Source of the DNA: Octopus bimaculoides
Lineage: Eukaryota
Direction of reading: 5' to 3'
Assembly: GCF_001194135.2 (NCBI RefSeq)
Contig: NC_068997.1
Coordinates: 45,958,498 to 46,022,497, forward strand
Length of the DNA: 64,000 nt
Below, piece by piece: positions 30,737 to 61,994 of the stretch. Position 1 is the stretch's first letter; each line of letters opens with the position of its first letter. Made by a program: the position numbers and the translations under genes. Under the pieces are notes generated by a model. The model was not told the origin of the DNA, made no database searches, and saw nothing but the letters and a program-made list of their open reading frames with translations.

Positions 30737-30953
30737 TTATTGATAACCCTGTAAACGCAGCACTGTAGGGTAGCGTTCTCGCACTGGAAGGCATTTCTGC
30801 CTGTCGATAAAAATGGAATTTATCTTGTTTGAGATTTCTTTCTCTAAACACATCCTTGTGTCTTGCAGGTTCTTGAGAGAATTCTGAGCTTCCATCAGTT
30901 TTTTTTGCAGGGTTGTTATGGAAGTGTTAATTTCATCAACTTCTTGGATTAAT
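30737..30953 (-). CDS. TEKT4: TEKT4 exon 7 (terminal)
   Basis: LIQEVDEINTSI...NSIFIDRQKCLPVRERYPTVLRLQGYQ*; tag acceptor; TAA at 30737-30739. Confidence 0.93.
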
Positions 30954-39900: not shown

Positions 39901-42846
39901 TTGCCCATGCATGCTTTAGATGGTTATGCAACCTACTAGAAAAAGCAACCAAATTTCCCTCTGCTATTTAATTTAAAAAAAACACGTAGTGGATGATGTA
40001 GTTCTGAAAAGAAAAAGAAAAAGACGAGATGTTCATGACTTGATCATGGGTCCCAACTGACCAGGGTTAGCATGGGAACTAAACAACTTAGAAACAATAA
40101 CAAAGTAGAAAGGAAGGAGTAAAACCATTAAAGTGAAGGCAAATCTGTAGAACATTCCTCTCGGTTTCAGTGGGAAATAATTATTTTTGCTAGTTTTTTT
40201 TTTTTTTCTATGTGCTATCAATTAATTTAGTGGAGGCGCGTGGTTAGGGTGTCAGCATCATGATCGTAAGATTGTGGTTTCGATTCCTGGAGCGGGTGAC
40301 GCGTTGTGTTCTTGAGCAAAACACTTCATTTCACGTTGCTCCAGTCCACTCAGCTGCCAAAAATGAGTAACGCTGCGATGGACTGGCGTCCCGTCCAGTT
40401 GGGAAACACATACGCCACTGAAACCGGGAAATCGGGCCCATGAGCTTGGCTAGGCTTTAAAAAGGCGCATTTTTAAATTTTTTTTTTATTTATTATCAAT
40501 TAATTTGACATCCGAACATGCTGAAAAAGATTTTTTCCCCCGCAAAACGTAGTGGCGAAGTCCTTTGCGGCATGTTTGGAGGTCAAATGAATTGATAGCA
40601 CACGTAAAATCTATGGAAAAAAGGAATTATTTCCCACCAAACGCAAATGGGGTGTTAGATCTGCGAAATTCCGATGGACTTATCCACCCCCCACTTATAC
40701 CCTCTTTTTCTATAAAGCTAGTCGTTTCCGATTGGTTTGGAAGTCATATTTGTTGATAACACACAAACAAATGGTCAGGGGAAACTCCAGGGACGAGGAG
40801 TCTGAGGTTTCCACCAGCCTCCTTCATTACCGGGAAGAAGTTCTTTGTGGCATGTCCGAAGGTCAGATTAGTTGATAACACATGGGAGAAAATGGGGAAA
40901 ATAATTAGTTCACCAAAATCGGGAAGGGTGTTCTTCTATAAATTTACCGAAGGGAATGAAGAAATTTCAGTAAAAATATTATTCTGGATTTCATGGTGGC
41001 ATTGTGTTGCATAAACTTACATTTGCTTTTGAGGAAAACTAGAGACAGTCAAAGAGGATGCGACTTGCAATCCTCTTTTCTAAATAGTTTATGGCAAAAG
41101 AGTGTTGGCACTCCGTCACTTACGACGTCGAGGGTTCCAATTGATCCGATCAACGGAACAGCCTGTTCGTGAAATTAACGTGCAAGTGGCTGAGCACTCC
41201 ACAGACACGTGTACCCTTAACGTAGTTCTCGGGGATATTCAGTGTGACACAGTGTGACAAGGCTGACCCTTTGAATTACAGGTATAACAGAAACAGGAAG
41301 TAAGAGTGAGAGAAAGTTGTGGTGAAAGAGTACAGCAGGGTTCGCCACCTTCCCCGGCCGGAGCCTCGTGGAGCTTTAGGTGTTTTCGCTCAATAAACAC
41401 TCACAACGCCCGGTCTGGGAATCGAAACCGCGATCCTATGACCGCTTCCCTAACCACTGGGCCATTGCGCCTCCGCGGCAAAAGAGTATTTCATTTCAAT
41501 CAAATCTTTTTTCTTTCTTTTTTTTTTTTTTCTTAGTCAGATGATAAGAAAAATACACATGAATCTTTACATGGTCTCTGAGACTGGAGAGAGAGAGAGA
41601 AGTATCTCGAAATTCGGCCCAAATGCTTGCAACAGAAAGAACTTCGCTGAAGGTACCCAAGGACCAAGTAACAGTGTTGAAAAAGGCGATGGATTAAGTT
41701 TACCATCCAAGTAGTCCATGGCAGGATTTGAACGCAGAATGCCAAGCGCCAGACCAAATACCACAAGTACTTCAGTTTAACATTCTTGCAGTTCGGAGAA
41801 TCCACTGCCCTCGATTGGCATTTCTTTTAATGGATCTTGAAAGGATGATAAGTAAAGTTGCCCTCGGTGGGATTTGAACTTGGAGCGCAGAGTAGGAACA
41901 AATACCGCAAAGCATTCGATAAGACGCTCTAACGACTATGCCAAGTCACCGTGCCATTGTCGTAATAGTACATGTTAATTAGTCGCTGTAGTATGAGTGA
42001 ATCTATTGTGACCGAGGAAAGATTGTAATTAATCACTATAAACTGATTAAATATTTGTTAACTGTACTATGCAGTAGATTGGAAAAAATCATTAAAACCG
42101 TTGATTAGGCGCTGGCGTAGCAAAAAGCTTGCTTCCAAATCACATGGCCCCAGATTCAGTCTCACTGCGTGGCACCTTCGACAAGTGTCTTTTACTATAG
42201 CCTTGGGCTAAACAAAGCCTTGTGAGTGGGTTTGGTAGATGGGAACTGAAAGAAACTCATCATGTGTGTGTGTGTCTTTGTGTTTGTCCACTACCACCGT
42301 TTGCAACGGTGTTGGTGTGTTTACGCCTCCGTAACGTAGCGGTTCGGCAAAATAGACCGATAGATAATAAGTACTAGGCTTGATAAAAAAGTCCTGGGTT
42401 GATTTGTTCGACTAAAAAGCCCTTCAAAACGCCGCCCCAGCATGGCCACAGTCAAATGACAGAAACAAGTTAAGGACAGAAGATATCAACGTTGGAAATA
42501 GATGAGAGAGAAAGTGGAGGGGGGGGTTAGAAGTGACAAAAGAGATGGTCGGTGTCAAAGGTTATTAAGTTTACCTGTCGGTGGCAGATTGTAAATATTT
42601 GGTGTAGTTATTGTTACTCCACTCTATATCGTTATATTTGTTGCTTCGGTAACCTTGGGTCGAGATACCCATATCGTTTCCAGTGTTTGTCATCAACACT
42701 GAATCTTCAAATGTCTCTCGCTTGGTCCTACAGTCAAGATCACCGTCTGGTCTACATTCCATCGGTGGGTGGGTGATACTCGCTTCACCCACATCGCCCG
42801 TCGGTTGGCAGGTATTTAGGTTCGGGCCCACGACACATGCAGCCAT
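30737..42846 (-). CDS. TEKT4: Tektin-4 (tektin A-type), complete 7-exon gene, 467 aa
   Basis: Exons 42575-42846, 37751-38072, 35645-35715, 34759-34902, 33355-33577, 31882-32036, 30737-30953. All introns are GT-AG with phases 2,0,2,2,0,2, giving 1404 nt open. Tektin motifs: GERIQDISFWKFELER, EMDWSDKKEALQID, TPESWAQFTHDNI, signature [9 protein letters not shown], C-terminal RYPTVLRLQGYQ*. Paralogue assignment is from recalled similarity to tektin-4/tektin A1. Confidence 0.92.
31882..32036 (-). CDS. TEKT4: TEKT4 exon 6 (tektin signature)
   Basis: [51 protein letters not shown]; cag|...|gtatgt. Confidence 0.95.
32066..32696. mobile_element. Foldback/MITE-like element with long inverted arms
   Basis: GATCTATTTTAAAACGGGGGCCACAGT and its inverse ACTGTGGCCCCTGTTTTAAAATAGATC; second internal inverted block TTTCAACCAATCACTGAC; contains a 10-N gap. 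Confidence 0.65.
33355..33577 (-). CDS. TEKT4: TEKT4 exon 5
   Basis: QSTPESWAQFTHDNIILAENERKSSIQLRE...AFQKRLQELDDAKFRHESHLKK; ag|...|gtattt. Confidence 0.93.
34401..34527. mobile_element. 127-bp Tc1/mariner-type MITE, TA target duplication
   Basis: TA|CAGGGTGTCCACAAAGTCTGG...CCAGACTTTGTGGACACCCTG|TA; interrupts a family-4 SINE. Confidence 0.92.
34759..34902 (-). CDS. TEKT4: TEKT4 exon 4
   Basis: NNRLTKQKMEMDWSDKKEALQIDSRCAILRNHHTNKQFFPGAANFQE; cag|...|gtaagt. Confidence 0.92.
35645..35715 (-). CDS. TEKT4: TEKT4 exon 3
   Basis: EVKLINNVQELLKKTIAKTEEQL; cag|...|gtaagt; 71 nt. Confidence 0.9.
37751..38072 (-). CDS. TEKT4: TEKT4 exon 2
   Basis: cag|A CAT AAC...; HNSEVIRNDSS...FWKFELER...EIPLHIATDNLNCRLRRQGIDLVEDIVEKALLQ; donor GTAACT. 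Confidence 0.95.
41103..41474 (-). mobile_element. SINE family 4, full-length copy
   Basis: Colinear with 7320-7704. Confidence 0.85.
42575..42846 (-). CDS. TEKT4: TEKT4 exon 1
   Basis: ATG at 42846; MAACVVGP...GYRSNKYNDIEWSNNNYTKYLQSATD; donor AG|GTAAAC, phase 2. Confidence 0.85.
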
Positions 42847-45803: not shown

Positions 45804-46453
45804 CTAGTTAAACAACCTGTTCTGACTCCCAACTGTACTTGATGGAAAGCCTTCATTTTGGTATCCTGTGTTATAAGCATTGAAATAAGGCTGTTGCATT
45901 TGTCCATTCTTGTTATTACCACCACCATGTATATTCAACATGATCCCATCCTGTGCCTGAGAATTATCAAACATATTAGTAGATTCCTGGTTGTACCCCA
46001 TCCCTTCACTGTTAGTGGATTCCTGGTTGTGCCCCATCCCTTCACTGTTAATGGGTCCCTGGTTGTACCCCATCCCTTCACTGTTAGTGGGTCCCTGGTT
46101 GTACCCCATCCCTTCACTGTTAGAGGGTCTCTGATTGTACCCCATCCCTTCACTGTTAGAGGGTCTCTGATTGTACCCCATCCCTTCACTGTTAGTAGAT
46201 TTCTGGTTGTACCCCATCCCTTCACTGTTAGTAGGTCTCTGGTTGTATCCCATCCCTTTACTGTTAGTTGTTTTACTACTGTCAACAAATGCTCCAGTAG
46301 TGTCACGCCCTGTTGAATTCACGGGGTTACCAAACCACTGGTCATTGGGTTGGTTCATGCTACTGTTGCCAATGTCTCCATACGTGTGGGACCAGCTGTC
46401 CACCTTCCTATCTACACTGCTGGAATCCCAAGATCTCTGGTTAGATCCACCAC
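45804..46453 (-). CDS. SAFB-like gene terminal exon, G/N/Q/S-rich with 12-aa repeats
   Basis: ttttag|GT GGGSNQRSWDSS...(TNSEGMGYNQxx)8...QNRLFN*; TAG at 45804-45806. Confidence 0.85.
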
Positions 46454-46980
46454 CTAAAAGGAAGACACAGAAAAGGTAGTGTTTAAAGATGCACAAATAT
46501 ATAAACTGAAAATTTCAATAAATTAATATTAAAACAGAATAATGAGAGATATAAAGAAAAGGATTGTATTGAAAGAGGGACTGCTTCAGAAGGCACAGAG
46601 AAACAGTGAAAATACTATATTCGGAAATAGAGCGTACAAAATTTCATCTGTGGGTGAGTGAGTGAAATGGAGACGGGGAAAGAGGTGATCAAAAACATCG
46701 AGTAAAATAATAGAAACTTACCAAGAGAACTTCTCATTTGACCCCTTCTATTACGAGAGGATGTATTTCGGCTGTCAGGATCTTGTTCTCGATTAGGGCC
46801 AATATAACTTCTTTCAGGTTCTCTACTTCGACCCATGTCTCTTCTTGCATCAAAGCCTATCCTGGAAAAAGAAGTAAATCAGACAGAAGAAGGGCAAATT
46901 TACTTTGTTATAGAAGTATTTAGAAACATATCTGCACAAAAGACACTTTGATATTTGGTTTCTAAAACTAAAAATTCAGC

Positions 46981-47021
<41 letters not shown>

Positions 47022-50000
47022 AAATTACCAGTTTTCATCTGTTCGAGACCAGTCATCATTTCTGCCTTGAAAATCTTGCGAAGGACCCATTTCCCAACTC
47101 GTCATTCCTCTTTCTGTCTGACCAACCCATCTTCCATAATCTGTATTGCCATATTCATTATAGCTGACAGAAAAAAAGAGAAATGACATATTATATGTAA
47201 CCATGTACCTCCTCTATAGCAAAATACCTGTTTTTGCCTCTCTGTTTTTCTGTCACACTATAACCTTTCTTCATCTGACACAAGATCACCTGCTCCAAAA
47301 TTCCTTGTCTTGCAGGTTACTTGGTGACCCTGCCAGTGCTGGTGCCACATAAAAAGCATCCAGTCCACACTGTAAAGTGGTTGGCTTTTGGAAGGGCATC
47401 CAGCTGTAAAAACCATGCCAAGACTGACCTCACCTGTGCTGGGGTTGTGTAAAAAGCACTCAGTCCACTCTGTGGGGTGGTTGGTGTTAGGAAGGGCATC
47501 CACCCATAAAAAACATGCCAAAACAGACACGGTAGCCTGGGGTAGTCTTCTACCTGGCTGGCTCCTGTCAAACCAACCGACGCCAGCATGGAAGGCAGAC
47601 AATGATGATGACGATGATGATGATATATATCATAAACACAATCATTATCATTTTAACATCTTCTTTTCCATGTTTACATGGTCTGATGGAATTCACTGAG
47701 GTGGATTTTCTACAGCCAGATGCTCTTCCAACTGCCCACCCTCACTTGCTTCCAGGTAAGGTTATATTTCCCCCTCCTAGCTGGACAAGTTTACACCTGC
47801 AACTGGAAATGATCAACACCACTTGTGTGACAGTGAGGCTTATTTACAACTATCATGCAATGACAAGGAGACACAAACACACAAATATATTACATATGAC
47901 AGGCTTCTTTCAACTTCTCTCTAACAAATCCAGCTACAAGGTTTTGGTCAGCCTGTGTCTTTAGTAGAAGATACTTGCGCAAGGTGCCACGCAGTGGGAC
48001 TGAACCTGAAAGTATATAGTTATATCATCATCATTGTTTTATGTCCGTTTTCCATGCTGGCATGGGTTGAACAGTTTGACAGGAGCTGACCAGCTGGAGA
48101 GCTGTCCATACTCCAATTGTCTGTTTTGGCATGGTTTCTACAGGTCAATGCCCTTCCTAATGCCAACCAATTTACAGTGTGCTGGATGCATTTTTACGTG
48201 CCAGCAGTACGAGTGCATTTTACATGGCATCGGCATGAGTATACACATACACACATGAGTACAAGAGGTCAAAGGCTGAGAAAGGAAAGAGAAAAATAAA
48301 CCCAATGTAAAACTACACAATTCCAGTAAATAGGAAGTAAGAAAAGAACTGACTCCATCATGCAAAACTTACTAGGATTCATTCTGGAATGGGGGTTCAT
48401 ATCTAGGAGCGTTGTTGTTATAACTGCTCCTCCTGGATCTTCTGGGTCTGTTCCAGTCTTTATCCCCACGAGGTCTCTTCATAGAATGAGTCATTTCCTC
48501 CGGTCTATTTTAAACAATAAACAGCAAAATAAAGTTAACAGAAGTAAACAACTATAGCACTGAATGCAAATAGAGGATAAGATAGTGAATAGTCTTAACT
48601 CCGAACAATAAACAAGAGTGCTTGCTATGTGGTTGTTCAAGCAACTAGAAACAGCAGCCAAATCTTTAAATCACTCTTTGTGGCTCCCTGATATAATGCT
48701 TTGCTTCCACCGTTTCCCCAGTCCTTCCAAGCCTGTCTCTTGGCTCTTATAGCACTGTCCACTTCCTTGTCCCACCACCAAGTCACCGTCGGCCTGAGAC
48801 TTTGCATCAACCACAGATTTGGTCAGCAGTACCCAGTAAACAATATATATTATGTAGATAAGTAAGGGAAAAGTGTATCTGTTTATTCCACTATTAGTTT
48901 ATACACACACATACATATGTGTGAGAGTAAGTATGTATATACACAAACATATAATACATGCATGAATATATGGGTGTGAGAGAGTGTGTACACAGACAAA
49001 TACACATATAACGCAGATGTTTATATAGTCACACACAAGAAGTCAAAATTGAGAAAAGAAAAAGAAAAAAAAAGGGGGGGGGGAATTAATGTTAAACATC
49101 ACAATTTCAGTGAATAAGAAATTGATGAAACCCTGCAGACAGGGTTTCCAGTACACACAGCTTACCGAGATTCATTCTGGAATGGAAGATCAAATCTAGA
49201 AGTGTTGTTATAATTGCTCATGCTGGGTTGATTGGGTTCATCATGTTGTTTCCTTTGATTCAGAGATTTCTGTATGGAATGTATAAGTTCTCTCAGCCTG
49301 TTTTAAAGAATAAGCAACAAATGAAGTTAACAATTGCTGCACTGAATGATAGCAGGTAATGGGAAAAGGGAGTAAATAGTCTTAAATCCGAATAATACAC
49401 AACTAAGCTAAGAAGAGCTAAGAAGCGTACTTCTATGTGATTACTCAATGAAAAACAACAGCCAAATCTTTGACAAAATCACTATTTATTGGCTTAAAAT
49501 TTTAAATGGATGCAACAGATAATGTAGGCCTACATTATGTCTAAAAATAGATGAAATGATCAAGACTGGAGTACCTTTGATCAAAGGTCTGCTCAATTTG
49601 ATGAAACCTAGGAGTAAACAACACTAGCTGTGGATTTAGAACCACAAAACAAGAACAATTAATGACTAGTGTTGACCTCTATGAAAAGCTGGTATATGCA
49701 CCAACACTGACCAACACAGAGGCTGGTGCATGCACCAACACTGATCTACATGAAGACTATTGTTTACAACAAAACTCATCTATATATCAGCACATGTTTA
49801 GATCAACATGGGTTTTATACAGTTAAAATCAAAAGTAAAAGTTAAGACTTTTAAATAACAAGCAAAATTACTGTTTAAGTTTTTCTTCAATTTGTCTTTC
49901 AACTTTCTTTTGAACATTTGGGAAAGGAAACGTTTCTTGCTTCTTCATTTGTTTTTCTTCAGGGATATCCAAGTGGCTTACACCTTCCAAAACTCTCCCA

Positions 50001-53000
50001 GTCATCTCATTACTCTGAACTTGTTTTCCATAATCCGTGTTCTTATATTCATTACCACTGAGAGAAAAAGAGATAAGAAATGATACACACACACACACTT
50101 GTAAGATGCCAATGTTAAAAAAGGTAAAAGAAATTTTAATTTAGAACACCACATTTCCAGTAATCTCTATCACACAGCTTACCGAAACTGACTTTTTAAT
50201 AGAAGTTGTAATGCAGCGAGTATAGGGAAATTTCTCATTATCGATCCCATGGGTCCAGCCGAGAGTGCTTCTTTACGGGGACTGCTTCCATCCTGAAGGT
50301 TCTGCATGAAACCGATCGTGTCTTTCAGCCTATTTTAAATAATAAACAACAAAATAACATTAACAAAAGTAAACAACCCCTCTACTGAATGATAAGCAGA
50401 TAGATGATAAGATGATAGTCTTAACTCTGAACAATAAACAACTAGGACACCAGTTGTGCCAACAAGAGTGTCTTTATGTGACAGCTAAGGCAACTAAAAA
50501 ATAGCAACTAAGTTTTTGTCAAATCATTCTTTGTTGCCGTAAAAATTTAAATGGACGCATCAGATAATGTAAGCCTATATTATGTCTAAAAACAGATGGA
50601 ATAATTAAGACTGAAATACCTCTGGTCAAAGATCTGCTCAGTATGGTGAGATATAGAGGTATAGTGACAGGTATGTATGTACACTAGCACTTGTAAAAGT
50701 GCCAAAGGCAAAAGTAATGTTAATTTAGAACACAGCAATTCTAGTACAGTAATCACTTGCCATATCATGGTTCGTCTATCAAGCCCTCAGTACATCGTGG
50801 ATTTTTCAGGCTAATATATGTAAATTTATATCACGGACTCCTCAGTATATCGTGGATTTCTGAGGCCAATAGATATTTCTATTTTTTGAGATTTTAATTA
50901 TTCCTGTAGTAAAATAAGCATTTTCATGCCTAAAAAATTCATAAATTAATCAATAAAAATACAGTACTGTATAACACATTAATTAAGATATATTAAAAGA
51001 AAATACGTAATGTACCGTAGATGAGTAAACAAAGAATCGCACACACTGTACGGAAAACTAAAGCCGGGAGACGAGTGTGTGGTGTTGTTTTGCATTTATA
51101 ATAAAATAAATATATACAAATTATAAAAGTAATACAATATACAGTACATTACTGTTTCTATTTTGTGGACTTTCATCTATCATGGGTTTTTTTTTAAAAG
51201 CAACACCTGCAATAGTCAAGGGATTACTGTAAAATGAAAGCAATGGTATATTGGTGTGCATCACACACAGCTTACCAAGGTTGATTTCGGAATGAACGTT
51301 CAAATAGAGAGGGGATATGGGAATTGTTCCTCCTATTCCTCTTTCTCTTTGATTGTGTGGGTCCATCTGGGTTGCTTTGATCTTGAGGTTGGTGCATGGA
51401 ATGGGTATTTCCTTCCAACCTATTTTAAACAATAAACACAGTAAAATGAAGTTAACAGAAATAAACAATTGCTGGATCGAATGATAAGCAGTGAGAGGAA
51501 AACATATTAAATAACCCTAACCCTGCAGAGTAAGTGACCAGAACACCAACTGAGCCAACAGAAGTGCCTCCATGGTACTTGACAGACTAGAAACAGCAGC
51601 CAAATCTGAAAAATCATTTGCTAAAGGGAAAAAAAAAAATGGATTCACTGAATTGTCTCCATCACACACAACTTACTGAGATTGATTGTGGGATGGAAGT
51701 TCAAATATAGACAGAATATTGGAATTTCTCTCCTTTGATCCTGTAAGTCCACTGGAGAACTCTCCCTTACATGGGTTGCCTCGATCCAGAGGTCTTTTCA
51801 CAGAACGTGTAATTTCTTGCAGCCTATTTTAAACAATAAGCAACAAAATGAAGATACTGCGCAGAATAAGCAGCTAGAGGATAAGATAGTAAATAACTTT
51901 TTACAGAAGGGTAAATGATCAGAGTACTAAGCAATATAGTACTCAACATACTAGAAACAGCAGCTAAATCTTCCTACCAAAAAAAAAAAATGTGGTTGAG
52001 CCTGTGTAATAAGAAGTTAGCTTCCCAACCATATTGTTCCAGGTTCAGTCTCACAGCACAGCACCTTGGGAAAGCGTCTTCTACTGCAGCTCTGGGTCAA
52101 CCAAAGCCTTGTGAATGGATTTGGTAGATGGAAACTGAAAGAAGCCTGTCACTGTGTGTGTGTGTGTGCATGTGTATATCCATTTATATGTTTGAGTCTT
52201 TGTGCTTATCCATTACCAGTGTTGATTTGCTTACTTCCCTATAACTTAGTGATTTGGCAAATAGAGATCGACAGAATAAGCACCAGGCTTTCATAAGAAC
52301 TTAGTAATGGAGTCAAGTTGTTTGACTAAATGTTTCATAGCAGTGCCCCAGCATGGCCACAGTCCAATGACTGAAACAAGATGAAGGGTAAAAGATAGAT
52401 TGTTTCCATCATGCACGACTTACCAAGATTGATTTTGGAATGGAAGTTGAAATATAGAGGGGGTATGAGGACTGTTCATCCGTGATCTCATGGATCCACC
52501 TGAGAACTTTCGCTTATTTGCATCTCTTGGATCATTAGATATTTCCATGGCATTTCTCATCTCATTCAGCCTATTTAAAACAATAAACAGAAAAATAAAG
52601 TAAACAACTGCTGTACTGAATAATAGAGAAAAAGATAGTAAATAGTCAAGACACCACCGAGACAACAAGAGTGCCTCTATGGCAATGATTCCCAACATGG
52701 GGCATACATTCCCACCAGTGGGGCCTGGGAAAATTGTGGTAGGGTGTGGGAGTTAAAATTTTTTTTTTTGTTCTTTAGTGGGATATGGAATTGTGAAAAT
52801 CTTTCTACAGCAGACTACACCTATATTCAGCCTAACCAAGTTAATCCCTCTGGTCAAGCATACTGTATGAAGACTGTTTGCTACAGTATAGCGCTATTCT
52901 AATGCCCTAGTGTGGATATTTCTTTAAGAAAAGTATATAATTATGAAAGGCGTGGCTGTGTGGTAAGTAGCTTGCTCCCCAACCACATGGTTCCCGGTTC

Positions 53001-53130
53001 AGTCCCATTGTCTGGCACCTTAGGCAAGTGTCTTCTACCATAATCTCAAGCTGTCCAAAAAGCCTTGTGAGTAGATTTAGTAGATGGAAACTGAAACAAG
53101 CCCATCATGTATGTATGTGTATGTATCTGT

Positions 53131-53176
<46 letters not shown>

Positions 53177-56100
53177 AAGTTGTTTTTTTTCCAACTACCA
53201 GTGGGACATATATTTTTCTGGAAAGTTATAGTAGGGCCTGGGGAAAAATAGGTTGGGAAAACTGCTCCATGGCATTCAACATACTAGAAACAGCAGCCAA
53301 CTCTTCCTTTAGAAATAAAAAGAGTTTTAAAAAACCGTTCCTCACCATCTCTCAAAAAAAGAGAGCAAAAAATCAGATACGTTGGACAACATAGTTCTCA
53401 AGTCTTAAAAATAGGTTGAATGATCACAGCTTTGACTATAGGTCTACACAATCTGGACTGATCAAGAGTTAATTTATAGCCAGAGAATAAGACAATAAAC
53501 AGTTCCAATACCAATACAACAGCTGAGATACCAATGTAGATAATGGCATTTATTCTCTGCTACTGAGAAACAAGAGACCTTCACAGTATATAATTTCATT
53601 TTTAATAAGACAAGGTTGCTTTATAAATATATTGCTGTCAATCTTGATTAAGTGGACTATGAAGAAAAATATTACAGCAGAAGTGTTAAGACCTGTCCCT
53701 CTGGCGGTGAAAAGCACTTGTGGCAGTGCCATGTGAAAGCACCCAGCACCCACTATAAAGTGGTTAGTGTTAGAAAGGGCATCTGGCTGAAGAAACCATG
53801 CCAAACCAAAACGGAAGTCTGGTGCAGCTCCCCAGCTTTGATCAAATTATCCAACCCATGCTAGCATGGACAATAGATGTTAAAAGATGATGATGATGAT
53901 GAACCACAATTTTATTTAGCTTGACATATCTTCTCAAACACAGCTAACTGCCAAAAGTCTCGGTTCCTTGTCAAGCAAAACACCAGAAGTTTCAGTCCCC
54001 AAGGGGAATAAAATAAATTAGTCAAGTTAAATAAGTGATGTCAAAGACAATGATAAAAAAAAATTAAGTTGACAGAGTAACAACACAATCTGTCTCACTC
54101 ACAGCAACACCTCTGTCCATAGAAAATTCAGTTCAAGAAGTTGTCTTCCGATTTCACATTTTGATAGGTTCAGATTTTCTATTTTCATTTTCTCCCACCT
54201 GAAAAGTATGAAATAACATAAATAAAGATATCAAAAAATTTAAACAAAAAGAAAATGAAAATCATAGTCTACACACACCAACCTGTAACTAATCTGACTG
54301 GTATTACTTTACAGAATATCCAAGAAACTTTCTTTGGAATCTCTGGGAAAATTAAGTATTTGTCCCAAGATCACTTTTCTAACCTTCTAATAGCTTTGTA
54401 ATAGATTTTAATGATGTGATTATTTTAGAATGCCATTATAAGGTGAGTATGAAAGACTTAAGTTTGAACAAAAAAAACAGCAAGAATATTTCAACCCGAT
54501 ACGGAAGGTTTTAATACTAAAGGGTTTAAACATAGACAGGATAAAGAACAGCTTGTTGACATAGGGTATTTTTGAGGTATAAGGATAATATATAAACACA
54601 TTTTGTTTTTCAGAAAAGAGAAGTCACATTTGGACAAAGTAACAGTGTGCCAGACAAGAGACAAACATCACTGTGAGCTGGACAGAGACATTTAAGTATC
54701 AAGTTAACAACATTCACATAACAATAAATATGTAGCATGTAGAGGTACAGTTTAGAGAGTATGTGTGATTGGTTGACCTATCTTTTATCTTTTACTTGTT
54801 TCACTCATTAGATTGCAGCCATGCTGGGACACAAGCTTAAAGAATTTTAGTTGAATGAATCACCCTCAGCACTTATTTTTTTTTTTTAAAGCTTGGTAGT
54901 TATTCTATCAATCTCTTTTGCTAAACCACTAAGTTATTGGGACATACATACACACACACCAAAACCAGTTGTCAAACAGTGGTTAGGGACAAACACAGAC
55001 ACAAAGACACACACACACACATATATATATATACAACAGGCTTTTTTCAGTTTACGTCTAACAAACCCTACACCCACAAGGTCTTGGTCGGTCCAAGGTA
55101 CCATACAGTGGGGCTGAACCCAGAATCATGTTGTTAGGAAGCAAGCTTCTTACCATACACCCACACCTGTGCCTACAAGAAATCTTGAACATATAACATC
55201 TTCCTTCTATCATCTTAAAGAATACATGTACTGGATAAGATAGTTCTAAAGATAGTCATAAAAAAATGGGATGGTTACAGCTGGAATGCCTTCAATCATA
55301 TGTCTGCATAATAAGATTTGATCTGAGACTAAGCAACAACACAAACAACAGTTCACCACAAGAATCGAGAAACTGTATGTCTGACAATCATTTCATTAAA
55401 TGTCCATGCTAAGGAGTATATCCTCTTTTCATCTCTATAAAGAGTAAAATATTTTCAGTAATGCCCAACCAACTGGATTTTTTCCTCTTGACTTACCTCC
55501 AGCTTTTGAAACAAATTAAATTCTAAGTTCATCATAAGCCAAATGAGCTATTCAAAAGATTTCAAAATGATTTATAACTCAGTCAGAAAAGGAAAAGCTG
55601 TACACAAAATTTGTTTTTTTCAGTTTCTCCAAGATTGATTAGAAAAAGGGAAGAAGCTATCCTTAGATTAAATACCTAGCCTGAAAGCTTGAAAGAGTGT
55701 ATACTCTGCTAAAAGCAGCCAAGGACCAGATGTTGTGTTAAACCAGGTGACAGGAGTATTCTTTTACCAAAAACTGGAATAGCCCCTCAGACGAGGCTTA
55801 ACATAGTTTGCATCTACCAAAATTTCACTAAAAAAGCACTGGTCAATCTGAGCATATGATACAAGACACTTGCCCAATGTGTTGCACAGCAAAGCATGGC
55901 GGTGTGGTAAGAAGTCTGCTTCCCAACAACATAGCTCTGGGTTCAGTTCCACTGTGTGGCACCTTGGGCAAGTGTCTTCTACTATAGCCTTGGGCCGACC
56001 AAAGCCTCGAGTGGATTTGTTAGATGGAAACTGAAAGAACCCGTCGTGTGTGTGGTTCTATATTTGTCCCCCCACCACCACCGCATGACAACAGATGTTA

Positions 56101-59100
56101 ATATGTTTACATCCCTGTAATCCAGTGGTTTGCCAAAAGGAGACCAATAGAATAAGTACCAGGCTCTTTAACAAAAAGTCCTGGGGTTAATTTGCTTGAC
56201 TAAAACCCTTCAAGGCAGTGTCCCAGCATGGCCACAGTCAAAAGACAAAAACAAGTAAAAGAATAAAAGATTACAATGATGGAATCCAGAATTAAGCAAT
56301 TATAATTTCAGTAGAATTTCAACAAACCTTAACTGTTCACCAAGTTGAAACAATCTCAAAGACTCCTCCTGTTTTTGAGAGAGTTCAAGTTTTCTCCACA
56401 GACTGTTATGTCTCCATCGTTTCTGATATAAAACAACATAAAATGTAGAAAAGAAAACCGCATAAAACTAACAAACCATATAAAACAATCACCATCCTCA
56501 TCATTTAACATGCAGGTGGCATGTAAAATACATTATTTTGAGAGGGGCCGTTGCCAGTACCGCCTGACTGGCCTTCGTGCTGGTGGCACATAAAAGCACC
56601 CACTACACTCTCAGAGTGGTTGGTGTTAGGAATGGCATCCAGCCGTAGAAACCATGCCAAATCAGACTGGAGTCTGGTGCAGCCATCTGGCTCACCAGTC
56701 ATCAGTTAAATCGTCCAACCCATGCCAGCATGGAAAGCGGACGTTAAACGATGATGATGATGATGATAACCAGATATCTGTCTGTTTACTTTGATTACTA
56801 CATGTGGGGCACAGCTGAGAAGGACAACAGCTGCTCTATCTGAAACACCAAGACTGAGCTGGTAGCCAAGATCAAGGTGGTGTTCAAATATCTTCCCAGG
56901 GACACAGTGAAGAATGCATGCACCAGGTTCTGAAGTTGTCTTGAGGCTGTTGTGGAAACTGAGAGCTGCTACCCTTAAACTGTTATCTCCCAGCCATAAT
57001 CTAGTTTATATATATTTTTATTTTTTAAAATACTTTAATTTTGGATGAGATATTATGTTTTTATTTTTATTTTTATGCAAACCGTCAAATTTAGCCTGAT
57101 CACCCAGTACATAAACATCTATCCTCTTTAAGCATTAACCATGTCAAATTTAGCCCAAATACCCAGTATATAAATAGGAGGCCAGCTGGCAGAAACATTA
57201 GCACGCCAGGCGAAATGCTTGGTGGTATTTCATCTGCCGCTACATTCTGAGTTCAAATTCCGCCGAGGTCAACTTTACCTTTCATCCTTTCGGGGTCGAT
57301 ATAATCGACTTAATCCATTTGTCTGTCCTTGTTTGTCCCCTCTGTGTGTAGTAAAGAAATAAGTATATAAACGTCTATCCTCTTTAACCCTTTCGGTACC
57401 AACCCGGCTGAAACCAGATCTGGCTCTGTAGTACAAATGTCTTGTTTTCGTAAGTTTTGAATTAAAATCTTCCACCAAACCTTAGTCACAATTTAGGTTT
57501 CTAACACTAGCTTAATGATAACTAAGCTATTTCACTAAATAATTGAAAGAAACACAGAGCATCTCGAAATAAAAATATTAACGAAAGGGTTAAGAGTTAA
57601 CCATGTCAAATTTAGCCTGTACACCTGGTATATAAACATCTATCCTTTTTAAGAGTTAAACATTTATATTGCAATAACCTGATTGACTCAACTTGCTCCA
57701 AAACCTATATCTATTGGAAAAGATGACCATCAATATTCCAATAGTAAATAACAATAAAGCTCATCATATAATTCAGTAGTTGACCATCTGGTCTGAAGAC
57801 AAACCAATAAAGAGAGGAGAACTCACCTTTTCAACTTTTATCTTATGGCCCTCAAATTTAGTTTGGTTCAGAAATGCAATACATTTTTCAGCCTCTTCAG
57901 GCTGAGACATTCCTATACTAGCACGATATTGAACACCAGATTTTTGTTTTTTTGATGATATACTGCCACCCAAAACCTGGTATGAACAGACGAAAACAGA
58001 AGTAGAAAATATTTAAACTTTAAACATGAAAAATTACATGTATGTATTCAATCCAAAAGTTAGCAACATCATCATCATCAACATCTTGAAAAAGGCAGCA
58101 AGCTGGTAGAATTGTTAGCACACTGGACAAATTGCTTCACGGTATTTATTTCTTCCGGCTTTGTGTTCAAAGTTCAAATCCTGCCAAGGTCAACTTTGCC
58201 TTTCATCCNNNNNNNNNNATATATTAAATATTTCAGGGTTTTTGTGTTTTTTTACTGATTCAAAAGGAAAGGGCAGTGCCCATGGTTTTTACAAGTTCTC
58301 CAAGGCTGGTAAGAAATATCAGAACTATTTCTTTTGAACAGTTGCAATTAATAGCTGCAGTGAAAGAATTCCAGAAAACCAGCATCCAGAGAGAAATGAC
58401 TGAGTATAGTGGTTATTATGGGGCTGGGGTGGGAGGAGGAGCGGGGAAGTGAAGGAAAAAAAAAAGAATGAGTGCCAAAGTGGAGGTGGCACAAGATCTG
58501 CCTTCATTAAGAAACAGGCTATGGGCATGGCCTTTTTTTACTCCTGACAAAACCATTAAAAGAAAAAATTTTTTTAATGAAAACACAAAAAACTCCTGTA
58601 AAGAATTTTACATTTCTTCAATTTAAGATATATCCTGTTAATGTGCAATAATCTTTGGATATTGTACATTATCTGTACATTATTTGGAGAGAGGAGAGGA
58701 TGGGAAAGACATGTTTTTGGAATTAAGGTAGGTGTGTGTTGGCAAGTGACTCCATACCAATCAGTCAGGTGACATTTAAAAAAAATTTTTTTTTATGCAG
58801 CCTGTTAGTAAGAGCTGCTGTTTGCAATCAAACAAAGAACTGTTAAAGAAAATTGTTTATGAGATTTAATGTTATTTTGTGTAATCCAGGGAATATACAA
58901 AGTGTTGGAGTAACAGAAGATCATGATAACAATCTTGAGAGGAATCTTCATTGTATTTTCACCACAGAGCAAAACTCTACCAAAAACACTTGTAGTTCAG
59001 GAAGAGTGACTGGTATGATTTACCCACCACTGACAACAAAAGACAAGAGCAAAACTTAACATGCTTGCCTAACTAAGCATACACAACTACATTGTCAAAT

Positions 59101-61994
59101 GTCATTAAGAAGACACCTCCAGCACTTTGAATCCCTCTCTCTTCTTAGCAACTATCAGTAAGGCTTTCATAAATGTGAGATACATAACAACACATACAAG
59201 GTTGCTGTTGGTATTTTGAATATAAGTACTAATGAGTAATTACTATCATTAATTCAATAATAAAAAACATTATGTGAAAATGAAGAAGAAAATTTCATTC
59301 AACATACTGTGCCGTACTGGCTACAAAGCCTTTTCAGCTCATCCAAACAGGTCTTTGAAGTAAAACCTGTGATCCTCAAATTCCAACGGTGGTTCCGAGC
59401 TATTAAATGCAGAAAAAACACTCGACAATTATATATACATATATATACGCACACACACACATACATACATACAGGGTGTCCCTAAAGTCTGGACACATAG
59501 GCAAAATGTATATTTTCACAAAATACACATAAAATTTTCAACAATATTTTATACAATTGGAAGATTAACAAATAACATCTTCAATACGATTTCCACCATT
59601 TCTGATGCAAAAGGTTGATGCATTTTGCAAGATTTACGTGAACCCGATTAAATAACTCCACACTGCCATCAATCTGAGCACATTCACTCTTATATGCATT
59701 CCATCAAGTGGTGTTGCACCTGTGATTTTCAATCAGTACCTTTTCTCCCAGAAAAATTAAAAAAGAAGTCAAGGGGGCTAAGATCTGGTGAACAAGGAGA
59801 TCACTCCACAAGATTACATCTTCCAATCCAGTTAGGGAAATAGTCATTCAGCTAATCTCTTACCACTGTGGCAAATTGGAAGAGGTGTCATCTTGTTGGA
59901 ACCACCCAAAGTTCTTCACCTAGCTTTTTCAAAGTTGGGGCATTAACTGGTTTCTTAACATGGTGAGATAAGTCTCATCTGTTACACATTCACTGAAGAA
60001 AAAATGGCCCCAACACGAGATTTCCTAGTGTCCAGACTTTAGGGACACCCTATGTGTGTGTATTACACATATGAAATGAACCAATAAATATGCAACACAA
60101 CTCTTCTGCTTATATTCTTTTATTGGTTTCAGTCATTTGACTGCAGCCATGCTGGAGCACCGCCTTTAGTCAAACGAATCGACTCTCTTTGTAAGCCTAG
60201 CACTTATTCTATTGGTCTCTTTTGCTGAACTGCTAAGTTACAGGGACATAAACACATCAACATTGGTTGTCAAGCGATGGTGGGGGGAACAAACACAGAC
60301 ACATAAACATATATACATGACGGGCTTCTTTCAGTTTCCGTCTACCAAATCCACTCACAAGGCTTTGGCCGGCCCGAGGCTATAGTAGAAAACACTTGCC
60401 CAAGGTGCCAAGCAGTGGGACTGAACCCGGAACCGTATGGTTGGGAAGCAAGCTTCTTATTTCTTTATTGCCAACAAGGGGCTAAATATAGAGGGGACAA
60501 ACAAGGATAGACAAACGGATTAAGTTGATTACATCGACCCCAGTGTGTAACTGGTACTTAATTTATCGACCCCGAAAGGATGAAAGGCAAAGTTGACCTC
60601 GGCGGAATTTGAACTGAGAATGTAACGGCAAACGAAATACCGCTAAGCATTTCGCCCAGTGTGCTAACGTTTCTGCCAGCTTCTTACCACACAGCCACAC
60701 CTGCGCCTGTTCAAATTTCAAATATCTCAAACTGTTACAATAAGCTTAGAAAGTAAGAAAGAAAGAAATCCAAGAAAACATAGAAAACTTACGTTTGTCA
60801 ATGTCCGACTGATCCCTGCAACAATAAAACAAAATGTTTAGAAATATCAGAAAAATATTACGAATACTGAATGCTAAGAGACAGAATAGAAATGTTATTT
60901 CAACATTCAAATAAAATAGAATTAGAAACAAATTTATATTATACAACTTTACATCAAGATTCTCAATCTAAACAACCAGGCAGAGATATATTGAAGTTTA
61001 CAAATAAATAAGCAGTGTATATATACATATGAGTGTGTGTGTGTATATATGCATATATATAAAGGGTTAACAGTGAAAGCCCATGAGCGTCAGGCTCATA
61101 ACCATGAGGTAGTGAGTTCCGTTCCTGTACCGGACGGTGTGTTGTGTTCTTGAGCAAGACACTTTATTTCACGTTGGTCCAGTTTGCTGAGCTGTAGAAA
61201 TGAGTTGTGACATCATTGGTGCCTTCGGCCATGACTGACCATGGGATTGCACCTAGAAAGTTACCCTCCCAGGCACAAGTCCGGGCAAGGTTGTTTTATG
61301 GAAGACCAGCAGTCGCCCATGCATACCGGCCTCCCCTCTCCACACCACCAGTGTTATCCAAGGGAAAGGCAAATGGGCCGATACAGCTTGGCACATGATG
61401 TCGCAACCCATTTCTACAACTGAGTGAACTGGAGCAACGTGAAATAAAGTGTCTTGCTCATGAACACAACATACAGCCCGGTCTGGGATTCGAACTTACA
61501 ACCTCACGACCGTAAGCCTGACACTCTAACCACTGAGCCATGTGCCTTCACACACACACACTGAGAAGTACGATCATTTAACTAATAACATCTTTAAATC
61601 AAAGCAATGGGAAAGATGACAAGTGAACCAACCTTTTTGGCCTAACATGACCTTTCATTTTAGTTTGCTCTGTTTCCTTCTGAGCATTTTCTTCAATTAT
61701 TTTCTCCATTTCAATTCTGCCATTTGTTTCTTCATTTACCGTTGTGTCCATTTTCACATTATCTGTCTCGGATGCCATTAAATCAGCTTCTAGATCACTT
61801 TGTGTGTCATCAACATGTACAATCAGTGAAACATCTTTTTCACTCTGCTGATCGGGGGAAATATCCATATTGATTGTGTCTTTCAATGCAAATGGAGCTT
61901 CACATAGAACGCAGGTGGGTGTTGGAGATGAACTATCTGAGAGAGCTGTTTTGACCACAAATTTAAAATGGAGTTGAAATTTCACTTTTTTTTT
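45804..61994 (-). CDS. SAFB: Divergent SAFB/SLTM-like RRM protein, 5'-partial, 16 exons, 925 aa in window
   Basis: Exons 61633-61994, 60793-60815, 59308-59399, 57827-57976, 56328-56422, 54103-54198, 52424-52570, 51677-51823, 51276-51419, 50183-50329, 49872-50057, 49166-49297, 48373-48504, 47029-47163, 46722-46861, 45804-46453. All GT-AG, phases compatible, 2778 nt open. The RRM aligns by eye to SAFB NLWVSGL...DLKNLFSKYGK|VVGAKVV...MSTAEEATKCI..L..TELHGK.ISVEK, with the intron at the matching position (recalled, not database-checked). Confidence 0.68.
45975..46268 (-). repeat. 36-bp coding minisatellite, 8 units plus a stub
   Basis: Plus-strand unit approx. CCCTTCACTGTTAGTGGGTCCCTGGTTGTACCCCAT; encodes TNSEGMGYNQ(R/K/G/E)(P/S). 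Confidence 0.95.
46722..46861 (-). CDS. SAFB-like gene, Arg/Ser-rich penultimate exon
   Basis: IGFDARRDMGRSREPERSYIGPNREQDPDSRNTSSRNRRGQMRSSL; cag|...|gtaagt; phase 2 to 1. Confidence 0.8.
47029..47163 (-). CDS. Duplicated exon B2 (135 nt)
   Basis: ctgtcag|C YNEYGNTDYGRWVGQTERGMTSWEMGPSQDFQGRNDDWSRTDEN|gtaatt. Confidence 0.78.
48373..48504 (-). CDS. Duplicated exon A6 (132 nt)
   Basis: PEEMTHSMKRPRGDKDWNRPRRSRRSSYNNNAPRYEPPFQNES; tag|...|gtaagt. Confidence 0.8.
48700..48830 (-). mobile_element. LINE ORF2 linker fragment
   Basis: RPTVTWWWDKEVDSAIRAKRQAWKDWGNGGSK. Confidence 0.7.
49166..49297 (-). CDS. Duplicated exon A5 (132 nt)
   Basis: LRELIHSIQKSLNQRKQHDEPNQPSMSNYNNTSRFDLPFQNES; cag|...|gtaagc. 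Confidence 0.8.
49872..50057 (-). CDS. Duplicated exon B1 (186 nt)
   Basis: ctctcag|T GNEYKNTDYGKQVQSNE...QIEEKLK|gtaatt; phase 2-2. Confidence 0.72.
50183..50329 (-). CDS. Duplicated exon A4 (147 nt)
   Basis: LKDTIGFMQNLQDGSSPRKEALSAGPMGSIMRNFPILAALQLLLKSQF; tag|...|gtaagc. Confidence 0.78.
50747..51229. mobile_element. pogo/Tigger-like MITE, TA target duplication
   Basis: TA|CAGTAATCACTTGCCATATC...ATAGTCAAGGGATTACTG|TA, between exons A3 and A4. Confidence 0.75.
51276..51419 (-). CDS. Duplicated exon A3 (144 nt)
   Basis: LEGNTHSMHQPQDQSNPDGPTQSKRKRNRRNNSHIPSLFERSFRNQP; tag|...|gtaagc. Confidence 0.8.
51677..51823 (-). CDS. Duplicated exon A2 (147 nt)
   Basis: LQEITRSVKRPLDRGNPCKGEFSSGLTGSKERNSNILSIFELPSHNQS; tag|...|gtaagt. 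Confidence 0.8.
52424..52570 (-). CDS. Duplicated exon A1 (phase 2-2, 147 nt)
   Basis: tag|G LNEMRNAMEISNDPRDANKRKFSGGSMRSRMNSPHTPSIFQLPFQNQS|gtaagt. Confidence 0.8.
54103..54198 (-). CDS. SAFB-like gene exon (putative short coiled coil)
   Basis: ttttcag|G WEKMKIENLNLSKCEIGRQLLELNFLWTEVL|gtgagt; only the phase-2 frame is open. Confidence 0.65.
56328..56422 (-). CDS. SAFB-like gene, post-RRM exon
   Basis: KRWRHNSLWRKLELSQKQEESLRLFQLGEQL; phase 0 to 2; chosen on phase compatibility only. Confidence 0.5.
56790..57110 (+). mobile_element. DD37D/maT-like transposase C-terminus and right end
   Basis: DYYMWGTAEK...KNACTRF*SCLEAVV; ends CAAATTTAGCCTGATCACCCAG-TA. Confidence 0.7.
57388..57589. mobile_element. 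piggyBac-type MITE, TTAA target duplication
   Basis: TTAA|CCCTTTCG...CGAAAGGG|TTAA. Confidence 0.85.
57827..57976 (-). CDS. SAFB: SAFB-like gene, RRM C-half exon
   Basis: VLGGSISSKKQKSGVQYRASIGMSQPEEAEKCIAFLNQTKFEGHKIKVEK; cag|...|gtgagt; 150 nt. Confidence 0.85.
59308..59399 (-). CDS. SAFB: SAFB-like gene, RRM N-half exon
   Basis: RNHRWNLRITGFTSKTCLDELKRLCSQYGT; tag|...|gtatgt. Confidence 0.8.
59472..60052 (-). mobile_element. Internally deleted Tc1/mariner element, same TIR family as 34401
   Basis: TIRs CAGGGTGTCCCTAAAGTCTGGACAC; minus-strand remnant PCSPDLSPLDFF. Confidence 0.85.
60793..60815 (-). CDS. SAFB-like gene, 23-nt microexon
   Basis: ttgttgcag|GGATCAGTCGGACATTGACAAAC|gtaagt; DQSDIDK; phase 2 to 1, bridging the flanking exons exactly. 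Confidence 0.75.
61085..61551. mobile_element. Composite element: two convergent tRNA-like SINE heads flanking a unique core
   Basis: 75-nt block GTTGTGTTC..GACATCA is present in both orientations with 8 mismatches; the right arm has an intact A/B-box-like head. Confidence 0.75.
61633..61994 (-). CDS. SAFB-like gene, acidic exon (acceptor uncertain)
   Basis: ORF ...FALKDTINMDISPDQQSEKDVSLIVHVDDTQSDLEADLM...HVRPK; donor AAAAG|gttggt, phase 2; acceptor ctccag at 61995 (alternative cagcag at 61845). Confidence 0.7.

What the first reader, a model, noticed from the sequence alone, without database searches (positions are those of the whole stretch)
47029..52570. Array of eight tandemly duplicated, frame-symmetric cassette exons inserted into a SAFB-like RNA-binding protein
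Seen: six homologous type-A exons (132-147 nt) and two type-B exons (135 and 186 nt, shared NEYxNTDYG), in the order A1 A2 A3 A4 B1 A5 A6 B2. Every one is a multiple of 3, phase 2-2, open, and bounded by AG/GT. The type-A units also share roughly 150 nt or more of upstream intron (plus strand: CCTATTTTAAACAATAAACAGCAAAATAAAGTTAACAGAA...ACTGAATG...CTAGAAACAGCAGCCAAATC), so these are genomic exon-plus-intron duplications. The exons have diverged strongly at protein level yet none has a stop or frameshift. Known: canonical SAFB/SLTM has an RE-rich coiled coil in this region, and I know of no such exon array there. Inference: a lineage-specific modular disordered region that could be tuned by combinatorial exon inclusion.
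Basis: partly seen in the sequence, partly recalled or inferred. Interest (0 to 1): 0.85.

Follow-up and report, generated by a model that had tools for sequence, protein, structure and literature searches.

The report
Amplified exons in an octopus SAFB paralog
A fast-evolving extra copy of the octopus SAFB RNA-binding-protein gene has multiplied two of its own small exons into a row of eight in-frame exons; this is a real but fairly ordinary case of tandem exon duplication, and seven of the eight are already in the public gene model.

Summary
On the minus strand at 47029-52570 there are six A exons (147, 147, 144, 147, 132, 132 nt) and two B exons (186, 135 nt). All have AG/GT ends, are multiples of 3, are phase 2-2 and are open. 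A DNA profile finds exactly these copies and no others.

The window is Octopus bimaculoides chromosome CM046617.1. The gene is XP_014784467.1 ('SAFB-like transcription modulator', 834 aa). Its model already uses seven of the eight exons together; only A2 is unannotated.

The exons were not inserted. A and B are native SAFB exons, present at most once each in the other SAFB paralogs and orthologues examined, and the ancestral A exon is already 147 nt and phase 2-2. The array is confined to one SAP-less, weak-RRM paralog in a tandem SAFB gene cluster.

The copies are old, and their sequence drifts at about the intron rate (dN/dS 0.3-1.3). Frame, splice sites and 3n indels are kept far beyond neutral expectation, so they are real coding exons for a probably disordered tail.

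No docking/selector signal was found. Combinatorial splicing is possible but untested. This is a new member of a known kind, of modest interest.

The parts
45804..61868 (-). Whole coding span of the host gene, O. bimaculoides XP_014784467.1 / UniProt A0A0L8G3X1 ('SAFB-like transcription modulator', 834 aa), 15 CDS exons
   Evidence: tblastn at 100% identity; exact exon-by-exon rebuild of the protein; accessions; chromosome position CM046617.1
54103..54198 (-). Model exon 6 (96 nt, phase 2-2), remnant of the coiled-coil region; the exon that splices to A1
   Evidence: its homologue is present as two tandem copies in the canonical paralogs
52424..52570 (-). A1 exon, 147 nt, phase 2-2 (model exon 7)
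51677..51823 (-). A2 exon, 147 nt, phase 2-2, intact AG/GT and open frame but NOT in the RefSeq model
51276..51419 (-). A3 exon, 144 nt, phase 2-2 (model exon 8)
50183..50329 (-). A4 exon, 147 nt, phase 2-2 (model exon 9); the most diverged copy, more hydrophobic
49872..50057 (-). B1 exon, 186 nt, phase 2-2 (model exon 10); homologous along its length to the canonical B exon
49166..49297 (-). A5 exon, 132 nt, phase 2-2 (model exon 11)
48373..48504 (-). A6 exon, 132 nt, phase 2-2 (model exon 12)
47029..47163 (-). B2 exon, 135 nt, phase 2-2 (model exon 13); canonical B with a 51-nt in-frame deletion
48505..48670 (-). Upstream-intron part of the A6 duplication unit. The equivalent stretches are about 49298-49616 (A5), 50330-50661 (A4), 51420-51610 (A3), 51824-51990 (A2) and 52571-52700 plus a displaced piece at 53265-53321 (A1)
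46722..46861 (-). Model exon 14 (140 nt, phase 2 to 1), first single-copy exon after the array; fixes the reading frame of B2
45804..46453 (-). Last coding exon (model exon 15); contains a 36-nt tandem repeat of 8.1 copies at 45976-46268

Best explanation
The array is the product of repeated tandem duplication, most likely by unequal recombination, of segments of roughly 0.3-1 kb. Each segment carries one native SAFB exon plus its flanking intron. The duplications happened inside one lineage-specific, fast-evolving paralog of the octopus SAFB gene. In the SAFB genes that have both, the region after the coiled coil is encoded by one A exon (147 nt) followed by one B exon. The ancestral A exon is phase 2-2, and both B copies here are phase 2-2, so any extra copy keeps the reading frame and is tolerated. 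The paralog in this window has no SAP domain in its model, a weakly scoring RRM and only short remnants of the coiled-coil region. In it, A has been amplified to six copies and B to two. The copies are real coding exons, and by default most are spliced in together, as in the RefSeq model that joins seven of them. Together they lengthen a polar, probably disordered C-terminal tail by roughly 290-340 residues. Shown: the anatomy, the homology to single-copy exons, the restriction to this paralog, and the retention of frame and splice sites beyond neutral expectation. Inferred: the recombination mechanism, joint inclusion in mRNA, disorder, and any benefit of a longer tail.
For: Exon anatomy and in-frame concatenation. 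The gene is XP_014784467.1 at 100% identity, and its model contains A1, A3, A4, B1, A5, A6 and B2. Canonical SAFBs have at most one A and one B. Proteins P0002, P0004, P0005, O. sinensis SAFB1 X4 (P0007) and Argonauta hians (P0008) have one of each. O. sinensis P0003 has A only. The unnamed Logan transcript P0024 has one A-like segment. At DNA level, L002 has one A and one B, the P0003 gene in L003 has one A, and the gene upstream of it in L003 has one B. The ancestral A exon is 147 nt and phase 2-2. B1 and B2 align to the canonical B exon, including the conserved GTAATTT donor. The duplication units include intron, and the same intron stretch lies upstream of the single-copy A exon in O. sinensis. 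Neutral retention of six open frames (3e-3 to 7e-6) and of the splice dinucleotides (2e-2 to 3e-5) is improbable, and exon indels are all 3n. The copies are old: aligned intron identity within the array is 63-72%, against 85-87% between species. The paralog sits in a tandem SAFB cluster where exon duplication recurs. Pfam finds only a weak RRM (25.3 bits) and no SAP. Array composition is 70% disorder-promoting residues; AF2 pLDDT is below 50 over nearly all of the array.
Against: No RNA-level evidence was obtainable. The RefSeq/Gnomon model could be partly ab initio, and no assembled transcript ORF of this gene is in the protein collection (P0001's cluster has one member), although Logan does hold transcripts of other SAFBs. 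Amino-acid constraint on the copies is weak: dN/dS is 0.3-1.3, with mean pN 0.42 against pS 0.50. Exon bodies are no better conserved than the flanking intron, 0.56 against 0.56 when gaps count as differences. The best-conserved exon part, the last 30 nt, is equally conserved at all three codon positions, which does not look like selection on the protein. The intact A2 is missing from the model, so not every copy need be included. The AF2 run used a single sequence, so low confidence is weak evidence for disorder.
Confidence: 0.68

Rival explanations
1. Combinatorial cassette use. The eight symmetric exons are included or skipped independently or in blocks, in a tissue-specific way, giving many isoforms with tails of different length and content. 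This extends the best explanation rather than excluding it.
For: All eight are 3n and phase 2-2, as are exon 6 before the array and the entry into exon 14 after it, so every subset is in frame. A2 is intact but absent from the only public model. A acceptors have weak pyrimidine tracts (5-6 of 10 at -12..-3) against 9-10 of 10 for B1, B2 and exons 14-15, with strong GTAAG donors. Oppositely oriented SINE copies bracket A2-A6 and could loop them out: 47897-48021 against 52027-52151, 125 nt, 74% complementary.
Against: No isoform differing in these exons is annotated; the cluster of XP_014784467.1 has a single member. The symmetry is inherited from the single-copy ancestor, so it is not evidence of design for modular use. 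The upstream constitutive exons 2-6 also have only moderate pyrimidine tracts (6-8 of 10). Part of the shared intron sequence is an old dispersed-repeat fragment and is ancestral, not an array-specific regulator.
Confidence: 0.22
2. Mutually exclusive splicing of the A copies (Dscam exon-6 type). One A exon per transcript is chosen through competing base-pairing between a docking site and a selector next to each copy.
For: Tandemly duplicated homologous exons with co-duplicated intron are the usual raw material for such clusters (PMC9013439, PMC6071210, found). A conserved 20-mer sits upstream of most A copies.
Against: The public model joins five A exons in one mRNA. All copies are 3n, so joint inclusion does not break the frame, and the shortest intron is 125 nt, so there is no steric block. 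A scan of the bordering introns for 12-mers able to pair with the flanks of at least five A units gave no excess over shuffled controls. The long inverted repeats are SINE pairs, not a selector series. The conserved 20-mer also lies upstream of the single-copy A exon in O. sinensis and in dispersed copies.
Confidence: 0.03
3. Decaying or non-functional locus. The paralog is a dying duplicate, the 'exons' are relics, and the open frames and the gene model are survivorship plus ab initio prediction.
For: Near-neutral sequence evolution of the exon bodies. Degenerate RRM and no SAP domain. No transcript-derived ORFs of this gene in the collection. The neighbouring paralog V (P0098) has no A or B exon in its locus.
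Against: The 834-codon frame across 15 exons is intact with canonical splice sites throughout. Retention of six open frames, 24 splice-site bases and only 3n indels over a divergence two to three times the interspecies distance is very unlikely under neutrality. The orthologous RRM exon in a second octopod keeps frame and splice sites, with pN/pS 0.46.
Confidence: 0.08

Closest known systems
Tandem exon duplication as a general class (about 10% of animal genes, per a 2002 study cited in PMC9013439)
   Same: Adjacent homologous exons of the same length class and phase, duplicated together with flanking intron. One copy (A2) is unannotated, as is often reported for such duplications.
   Different: Eight copies of two exon types in one block is at the large end. 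The copies encode a weakly constrained, probably disordered segment rather than alternative versions of a folded domain.
Titin PEVK and similar arrays of short symmetric exons encoding disordered repeats (from my own knowledge, not checked here)
   Same: Many tandemly duplicated, frame-symmetric small exons encode a low-complexity or disordered region whose length can change by exon number or skipping.
   Different: The protein class differs (nuclear RRM protein against muscle spring). There are far fewer copies here, they are much more diverged from one another, and differential splicing is not demonstrated.
Dscam-type mutually exclusive exon clusters with docking/selector RNA structures (PMC1431710, PMC6071210)
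   Same: Origin by tandem duplication of exon plus intron; a short conserved intron element upstream of most copies.
   Different: No docking/selector complementarity found. Copies are co-included in the annotated mRNA. Nothing in frame or intron length enforces exclusivity.
Canonical SAFB1/SAFB2/SLTM proteins
   Same: RRM, a remnant of the coiled-coil region, and C-terminal homology to the octopus SAFB paralogs (about 48-65% identity in exons 14-15). The gene lies in the SAFB cluster.
   Different: No SAP domain in the model, an RRM that barely passes Pfam, a much reduced coiled-coil region, six A and two B exons instead of one each, and a 12-residue repeat expanded eightfold in the last exon.

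Membership tests
SAFB/SLTM family | N-terminal SAP domain (PF02037) | tested here: not met
   The Pfam scan of XP_014784467.1 finds no SAP. SAP is present in the neighbouring canonical genes. An unannotated upstream SAP exon is not excluded.
SAFB/SLTM family | Central RRM (PF00076) | tested here: met
   RRM_1 scores 25.3 bits against a cut-off of 20.7, residues 95-164. AF2 gives an RRM-like beta-alpha-beta fold with pLDDT 71-82.
SAFB/SLTM family | Sequence homology of the C-terminal half to bona fide SAFBs, and location in the SAFB locus | tested here: met
   Best hits are octopod SAFB1/2. Exons 14-15 are 48-65% identical to the paralogs. The gene lies in a tandem cluster on CM046617.1.
SAFB/SLTM family | Long R/E-rich coiled-coil region | tested here: inconclusive
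   Only exons 5-6 (about 60 residues) remain. They are helical in AF2 at low confidence. The canonical octopus genes have much longer R/E-rich regions, including two tandem copies of the LEKMKLEKEKLLRYRMEKELLE exon.
Tandem exon duplication array | Neighbouring exons homologous to each other, with the same phase and length class | tested here: met
Tandem exon duplication array | Duplication at the genomic level (flanking intron co-duplicated, unit not a dispersed transposon) | tested here: met
   Intron homology. Outside the array the unit matches only through SINE pieces and a fragment of about 60 nt.
Mutually exclusive exon cluster (docking/selector type) | One and only one copy per mRNA | tested here: not met
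   The annotated mRNA joins five A and two B exons. This rests on a predicted model, not on reads.
Mutually exclusive exon cluster (docking/selector type) | A docking site complementary to a selector next to each copy | tested here: not met
   No excess over shuffles in a 12-mer pairing scan. The inverted repeats are SINE pairs.
Regulated cassette-exon array | Isoforms differing in which copies are included | not testable with these tools
   No RNA-seq or junction data could be reached. Only one protein isoform is on record. The omission of A2 is the only hint.

The most novel reading that the evidence does not exclude
The eight symmetric exons, plus the symmetric exon 6, are used combinatorially and tissue-specifically, perhaps helped by the inverted SINE pair that brackets A2-A6. 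One fast-evolving octopus SAFB paralog would then produce a graded series of disordered tails of different length and motif number. That would be an exon-number 'rheostat' in a nuclear RNA-binding protein, kept by selection on frame and splicing signals rather than on amino-acid sequence.
Probability: 0.2. Interest if true: 0.5.

Novelty: new member of a known kind. Interest (0 to 1): 0.3.

Why it matters
It is a clean, datable example of how frame-symmetric exons let a disordered protein segment grow by exon amplification. Selection is visible on frame and splice sites but hardly on sequence. It also shows that octopods carry a tandem cluster of at least five SAFB-like genes in which exon duplication recurs: the coiled-coil exon, the N-terminal exon, the RRM exons and the A/B exons. 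I found no paper describing this. It adds one probable missed exon (A2) to the O. bimaculoides annotation. It does not reveal a new mechanism.

Tried and rejected
1. Exons evolving faster than introns. The MAFFT column identities suggested this: 60% in exons against 67-72% upstream, and A4/A6 at 48% against 86%. My first pairwise re-test used gap penalties so lenient that shuffled sequences scored 0.58, so it was uninformative. With strict penalties and gaps counted as differences, exon and intron are equal at 0.56 each. I dropped the claim of accelerated exon evolution.

2. The conserved intron 20-mer as an array-specific splicing element. Rejected: it lies in a dispersed-repeat fragment of about 60 nt and is also upstream of the single-copy A exon in O. 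sinensis.

3. Intronic snoRNA or other known RNA in the shared intron. Rfam gives only sub-threshold mir-297/mir-1277 hits on TA/TG microsatellites.

4. Docking/selector structure. No signal.

5. The A unit as a transposon. Outside the array only SINE pieces match.

6. A protein-level motif (F-E/Q-L-P-F-Q-N-E/Q-S) multiplied for multivalency. Not supported: identity is equal at all three codon positions.

7. Cross-species presence of the array. The O. sinensis locus L003 and its 10-kb tail hold no orthologue. Logan contigs of a related octopod cover only exon 4. Three loci from an ENA cephalopod contig do not reach the A/B region. Look-ups of P0002 and P0011 found nothing on record.

8. Literature. 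Nothing on SAFB in cephalopods or on this accession. One search term was a guessed locus identifier and carries no weight.
Full report
**Observation.** The gene lies on the minus strand. Reading the reverse complement of 46500-53200 shows eight open segments. I fixed the boundaries by hand and then checked them by script. They are A1 52424-52570 (147 nt), A2 51677-51823 (147), A3 51276-51419 (144), A4 50183-50329 (147), B1 49872-50057 (186), A5 49166-49297 (132), A6 48373-48504 (132) and B2 47029-47163 (135). Each follows an AG and precedes a GT. Each begins with the third base of a codon and ends after the second. Each is open, and the eight-exon concatenate has no stop. The copies are only about 55-70% identical and there is no assembly gap inside the array, so a mis-assembly artefact is not a concern.

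**What the locus is.** A protein search with the conceptual translation returned O. bimaculoides XP_014784467.1 (UniProt A0A0L8G3X1, 834 aa). It is now named 'SAFB-like transcription modulator'. It maps to the window at 100% identity. I rebuilt it exactly as 15 CDS exons spanning 45804-61868. Model exons 7-13 are A1, A3, A4, B1, A5, A6 and B2, with the same boundaries as above. A2 is the only unit not in the model. The window corresponds to chromosome CM046617.1 at about 45,958,498-46,022,497. Pfam finds a weak RRM (25.3 bits, cut-off 20.7) and no SAP domain.

**The exons are native, not inserted.** The other octopus SAFB proteins carry at most one A-like and one B-like exon.
- One A and one B: O. 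bimaculoides P0002, P0004 and P0005, O. sinensis SAFB1 X4 (P0007) and Argonauta hians (P0008). The A exon reads e.g. LNEMRHPAKKPHDR...RFELPFQNES and the B exon YNEYENTDYGRR....
- One A only: O. sinensis SAFB2 (P0003).
- One A-like segment: a more distant SAFB transcript from Logan whose source is unnamed (P0024).

At DNA level, L002 has one A and one B. In L003 the P0003 gene has one A and the gene upstream of it has one B. The single-copy A exon is 147 nt and phase 2-2 in both species. B1 and B2 align to the canonical B exon along their length, including the GTAATTT donor, and B2 has a 51-nt in-frame deletion. So the frame symmetry is inherited from the ancestral exons. This explains why extra copies are tolerated.

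**A gene cluster prone to exon duplication.** On the same chromosome, within about 150 kb, lie the following, all on one strand:
- the P0004 gene, with a SAP-containing model next to it;
- an unnamed paralog, here called U, whose 3' end is about 8 kb upstream of the window gene (L001:373-1900);
- the window gene itself;
- a tektin gene;
- a further paralog, here called V (P0098, XP_014784461.2), which overlaps window 1-24138 and has no A or B exon anywhere in its locus.

The P0002/P0005 gene is on the same chromosome, but its position was not found. O. sinensis has at least two tandem SAFB genes. Exon duplication recurs across the family. The canonical genes have two copies of the coiled-coil exon. 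V has two copies of the N-terminal exon. Three SAFB-like genes on an ENA cephalopod contig each have two copies of the RRM exon pair. Among everything I could read, the six-A, two-B array is unique to the window gene.

**Is it maintained?**
- A random 147-nt stretch of local composition is open in a given frame with P=0.043.
- Simulated neutral decay at 15-35% substitution per copy keeps all six A frames open with P=3e-3 to 7e-6, and keeps all 24 splice-site bases with P=2e-2 to 3e-5.
- The four length changes among the A exons are all multiples of 3.
- The copies are old. Aligned intron identity within the array is 63-72%. Between this species and a related octopod it is 85-87%.
- Amino-acid constraint is weak. 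Pairwise dN/dS is 0.3-1.3, with mean pN 0.42 and pS 0.50, on only 37-48 codons per pair and near saturation.
- With a fair alignment, exon bodies are as diverged as the flanking intron (0.56 each). Only the last 30 nt stand out at 0.72, and there identity is equal at all three codon positions.

The picture is selection for 'an exon that splices and stays in frame', not for a particular peptide.

**Shared intron.** About 130-210 nt upstream of each A exon aligns among the copies. For A4/A5 the homology runs to about 330 nt. The same stretch lies upstream of the single-copy A exon of O. sinensis P0003, so it is ancestral. In A1 this piece has been pushed about 700 nt upstream by insertions. Rfam finds no known RNA there.

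**Splicing mode.** Mutually exclusive choice is unlikely.
- The model joins five A exons.
- Nothing in frame or intron length enforces exclusivity; the shortest intron is 125 nt.
- A pairing scan found no docking/selector excess over shuffles.

Cassette use remains possible. Every subset is in frame. A2 is intact yet unannotated. A acceptors have weaker pyrimidine tracts than B or the downstream exons. An inverted SINE pair brackets A2-A6. None of this is evidence of actual alternative use, and no RNA data could be reached. The collection holds no transcript-derived ORF of this gene.

**Protein.** The array is rich in S, N, R, Q, E and P, with 70% disorder-promoting and 23% hydrophobic residues. 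A single-sequence AF2 model is confident only for the RRM and for one helix across the end of B1 and the start of A5 (residues 422-457). The rest of the array is below pLDDT 50. This is consistent with disorder but is weak evidence.

**Other species.** A 77-aa Logan ORF (P0009, from runs SRR11869384, 85, 90 and 91) is the orthologue of this paralog's own diverged RRM exon. The contigs also carry the introns on both sides of the exon. The exon is 87% identical in nucleotides, the introns 85-87%, and pN/pS is 0.46 on few sites. Frame and splice sites are kept. So the paralog is not private to O. bimaculoides and is weakly constrained. Whether the array is shared could not be tested.

**Comparison and verdict.** Tandem exon duplication is common; about 10% of animal genes have it, per a 2002 study cited in PMC9013439. 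Arrays of symmetric exons that encode disordered repeats are known, titin PEVK being an example from my own knowledge. I found no paper on SAFB in cephalopods. The finding is a correct and careful observation of a real exon amplification. The gene and seven of the eight exons are already annotated, and the mechanism is a known one. The interesting part, combinatorial use, is untested. I rate it a new member of a known kind, with interest about 0.3.

Noticed in passing
window 45976-46268 (minus-strand coding, last exon): A 36-nt tandem repeat, 8.1 copies at 91% match, encodes NSEGMGYNQxPx eight times. The canonical paralogs have a single GNSGGMGQNLGPGN-like stretch. The same gene has therefore also expanded a repeat inside an exon, and recently.
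   Followed up: partly
window 1-24138 (minus); exon seen at 5854-6066: A further SAFB-like paralog, here called V (XP_014784461.2, 435 aa), ends after its RRM and has no A or B exon in its locus. Its N-terminal 'SEENESLIVLVDDIHNDLDADL' exon is duplicated in tandem (L008 28070-28285 and 34546-34773; the second copy lies outside the window).
   Followed up: partly
L001:373-1900 (about 8 kb upstream of the window gene, outside the window): The 3' end of yet another SAFB paralog, here called U. Its last exon equals P0011 at 100% identity. Its A/B region could not be fetched, so I do not know whether it also has an array.
   Followed up: partly
window 47897-48021 and 52027-52151 (also 52981-53060): Oppositely oriented SINE copies (125 nt, 74% complementary) lie in the A6-B2 intron and the A1-A2 intron and so bracket A2-A6. 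Those six exons total 888 nt, a multiple of 3. They could form a pre-mRNA stem that favours block skipping, back-splicing or editing.
   Followed up: no
L003 30014-30145 and 31587-31715; L002 10001-10117 and 11830-11952: The canonical octopus SAFB genes carry two tandem copies of the coiled-coil exon (LEKMKLEKEKLLRYRMEKELLE...), both included in the annotated proteins.
   Followed up: partly
L009 14496-15087 and 17388-17847; L010 16428-16959 and 18664-19109; L011 14893-15424 and 17132-17575: Three SAFB-like genes lie on one 370-kb cephalopod contig from an ENA assembly (ERZ21867824, ctg122310l). Each has two tandem copies of the two-exon RRM unit, which makes them candidates for mutually exclusive RRM exons.
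   Followed up: no
window about 30740-38077 (minus): A tektin gene (Pfam PF03148 on the annotated 467-aa product) sits between the window gene and paralog V, inside the SAFB cluster.
   Followed up: no
window 6666-6685, 10654-10710, 34006-34025, 39921-39955: Dispersed copies of a fragment of about 60 nt (…TGATTTGAG…GATTTGGCTGCTRTTTCTAGYAGGTTGAGTAAC…). It is also embedded in the intron upstream of each A exon and is probably an old, unclassified transposon remnant.
   Followed up: partly
window about 20157-21436 (both strands): Long open frames with retrotransposon-like features (e.g. ...VVMGDFNAKVGHG..., and RT-like stretches on the other strand), probably a LINE insertion.
   Followed up: no
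window 53098-53175 and 59416-59479: Sub-threshold Rfam hits to mir-297/mir-1277 (at most 42 bits, against gathering scores of 81-90) fall on TA/TG microsatellites and are almost certainly spurious.
   Followed up: yes
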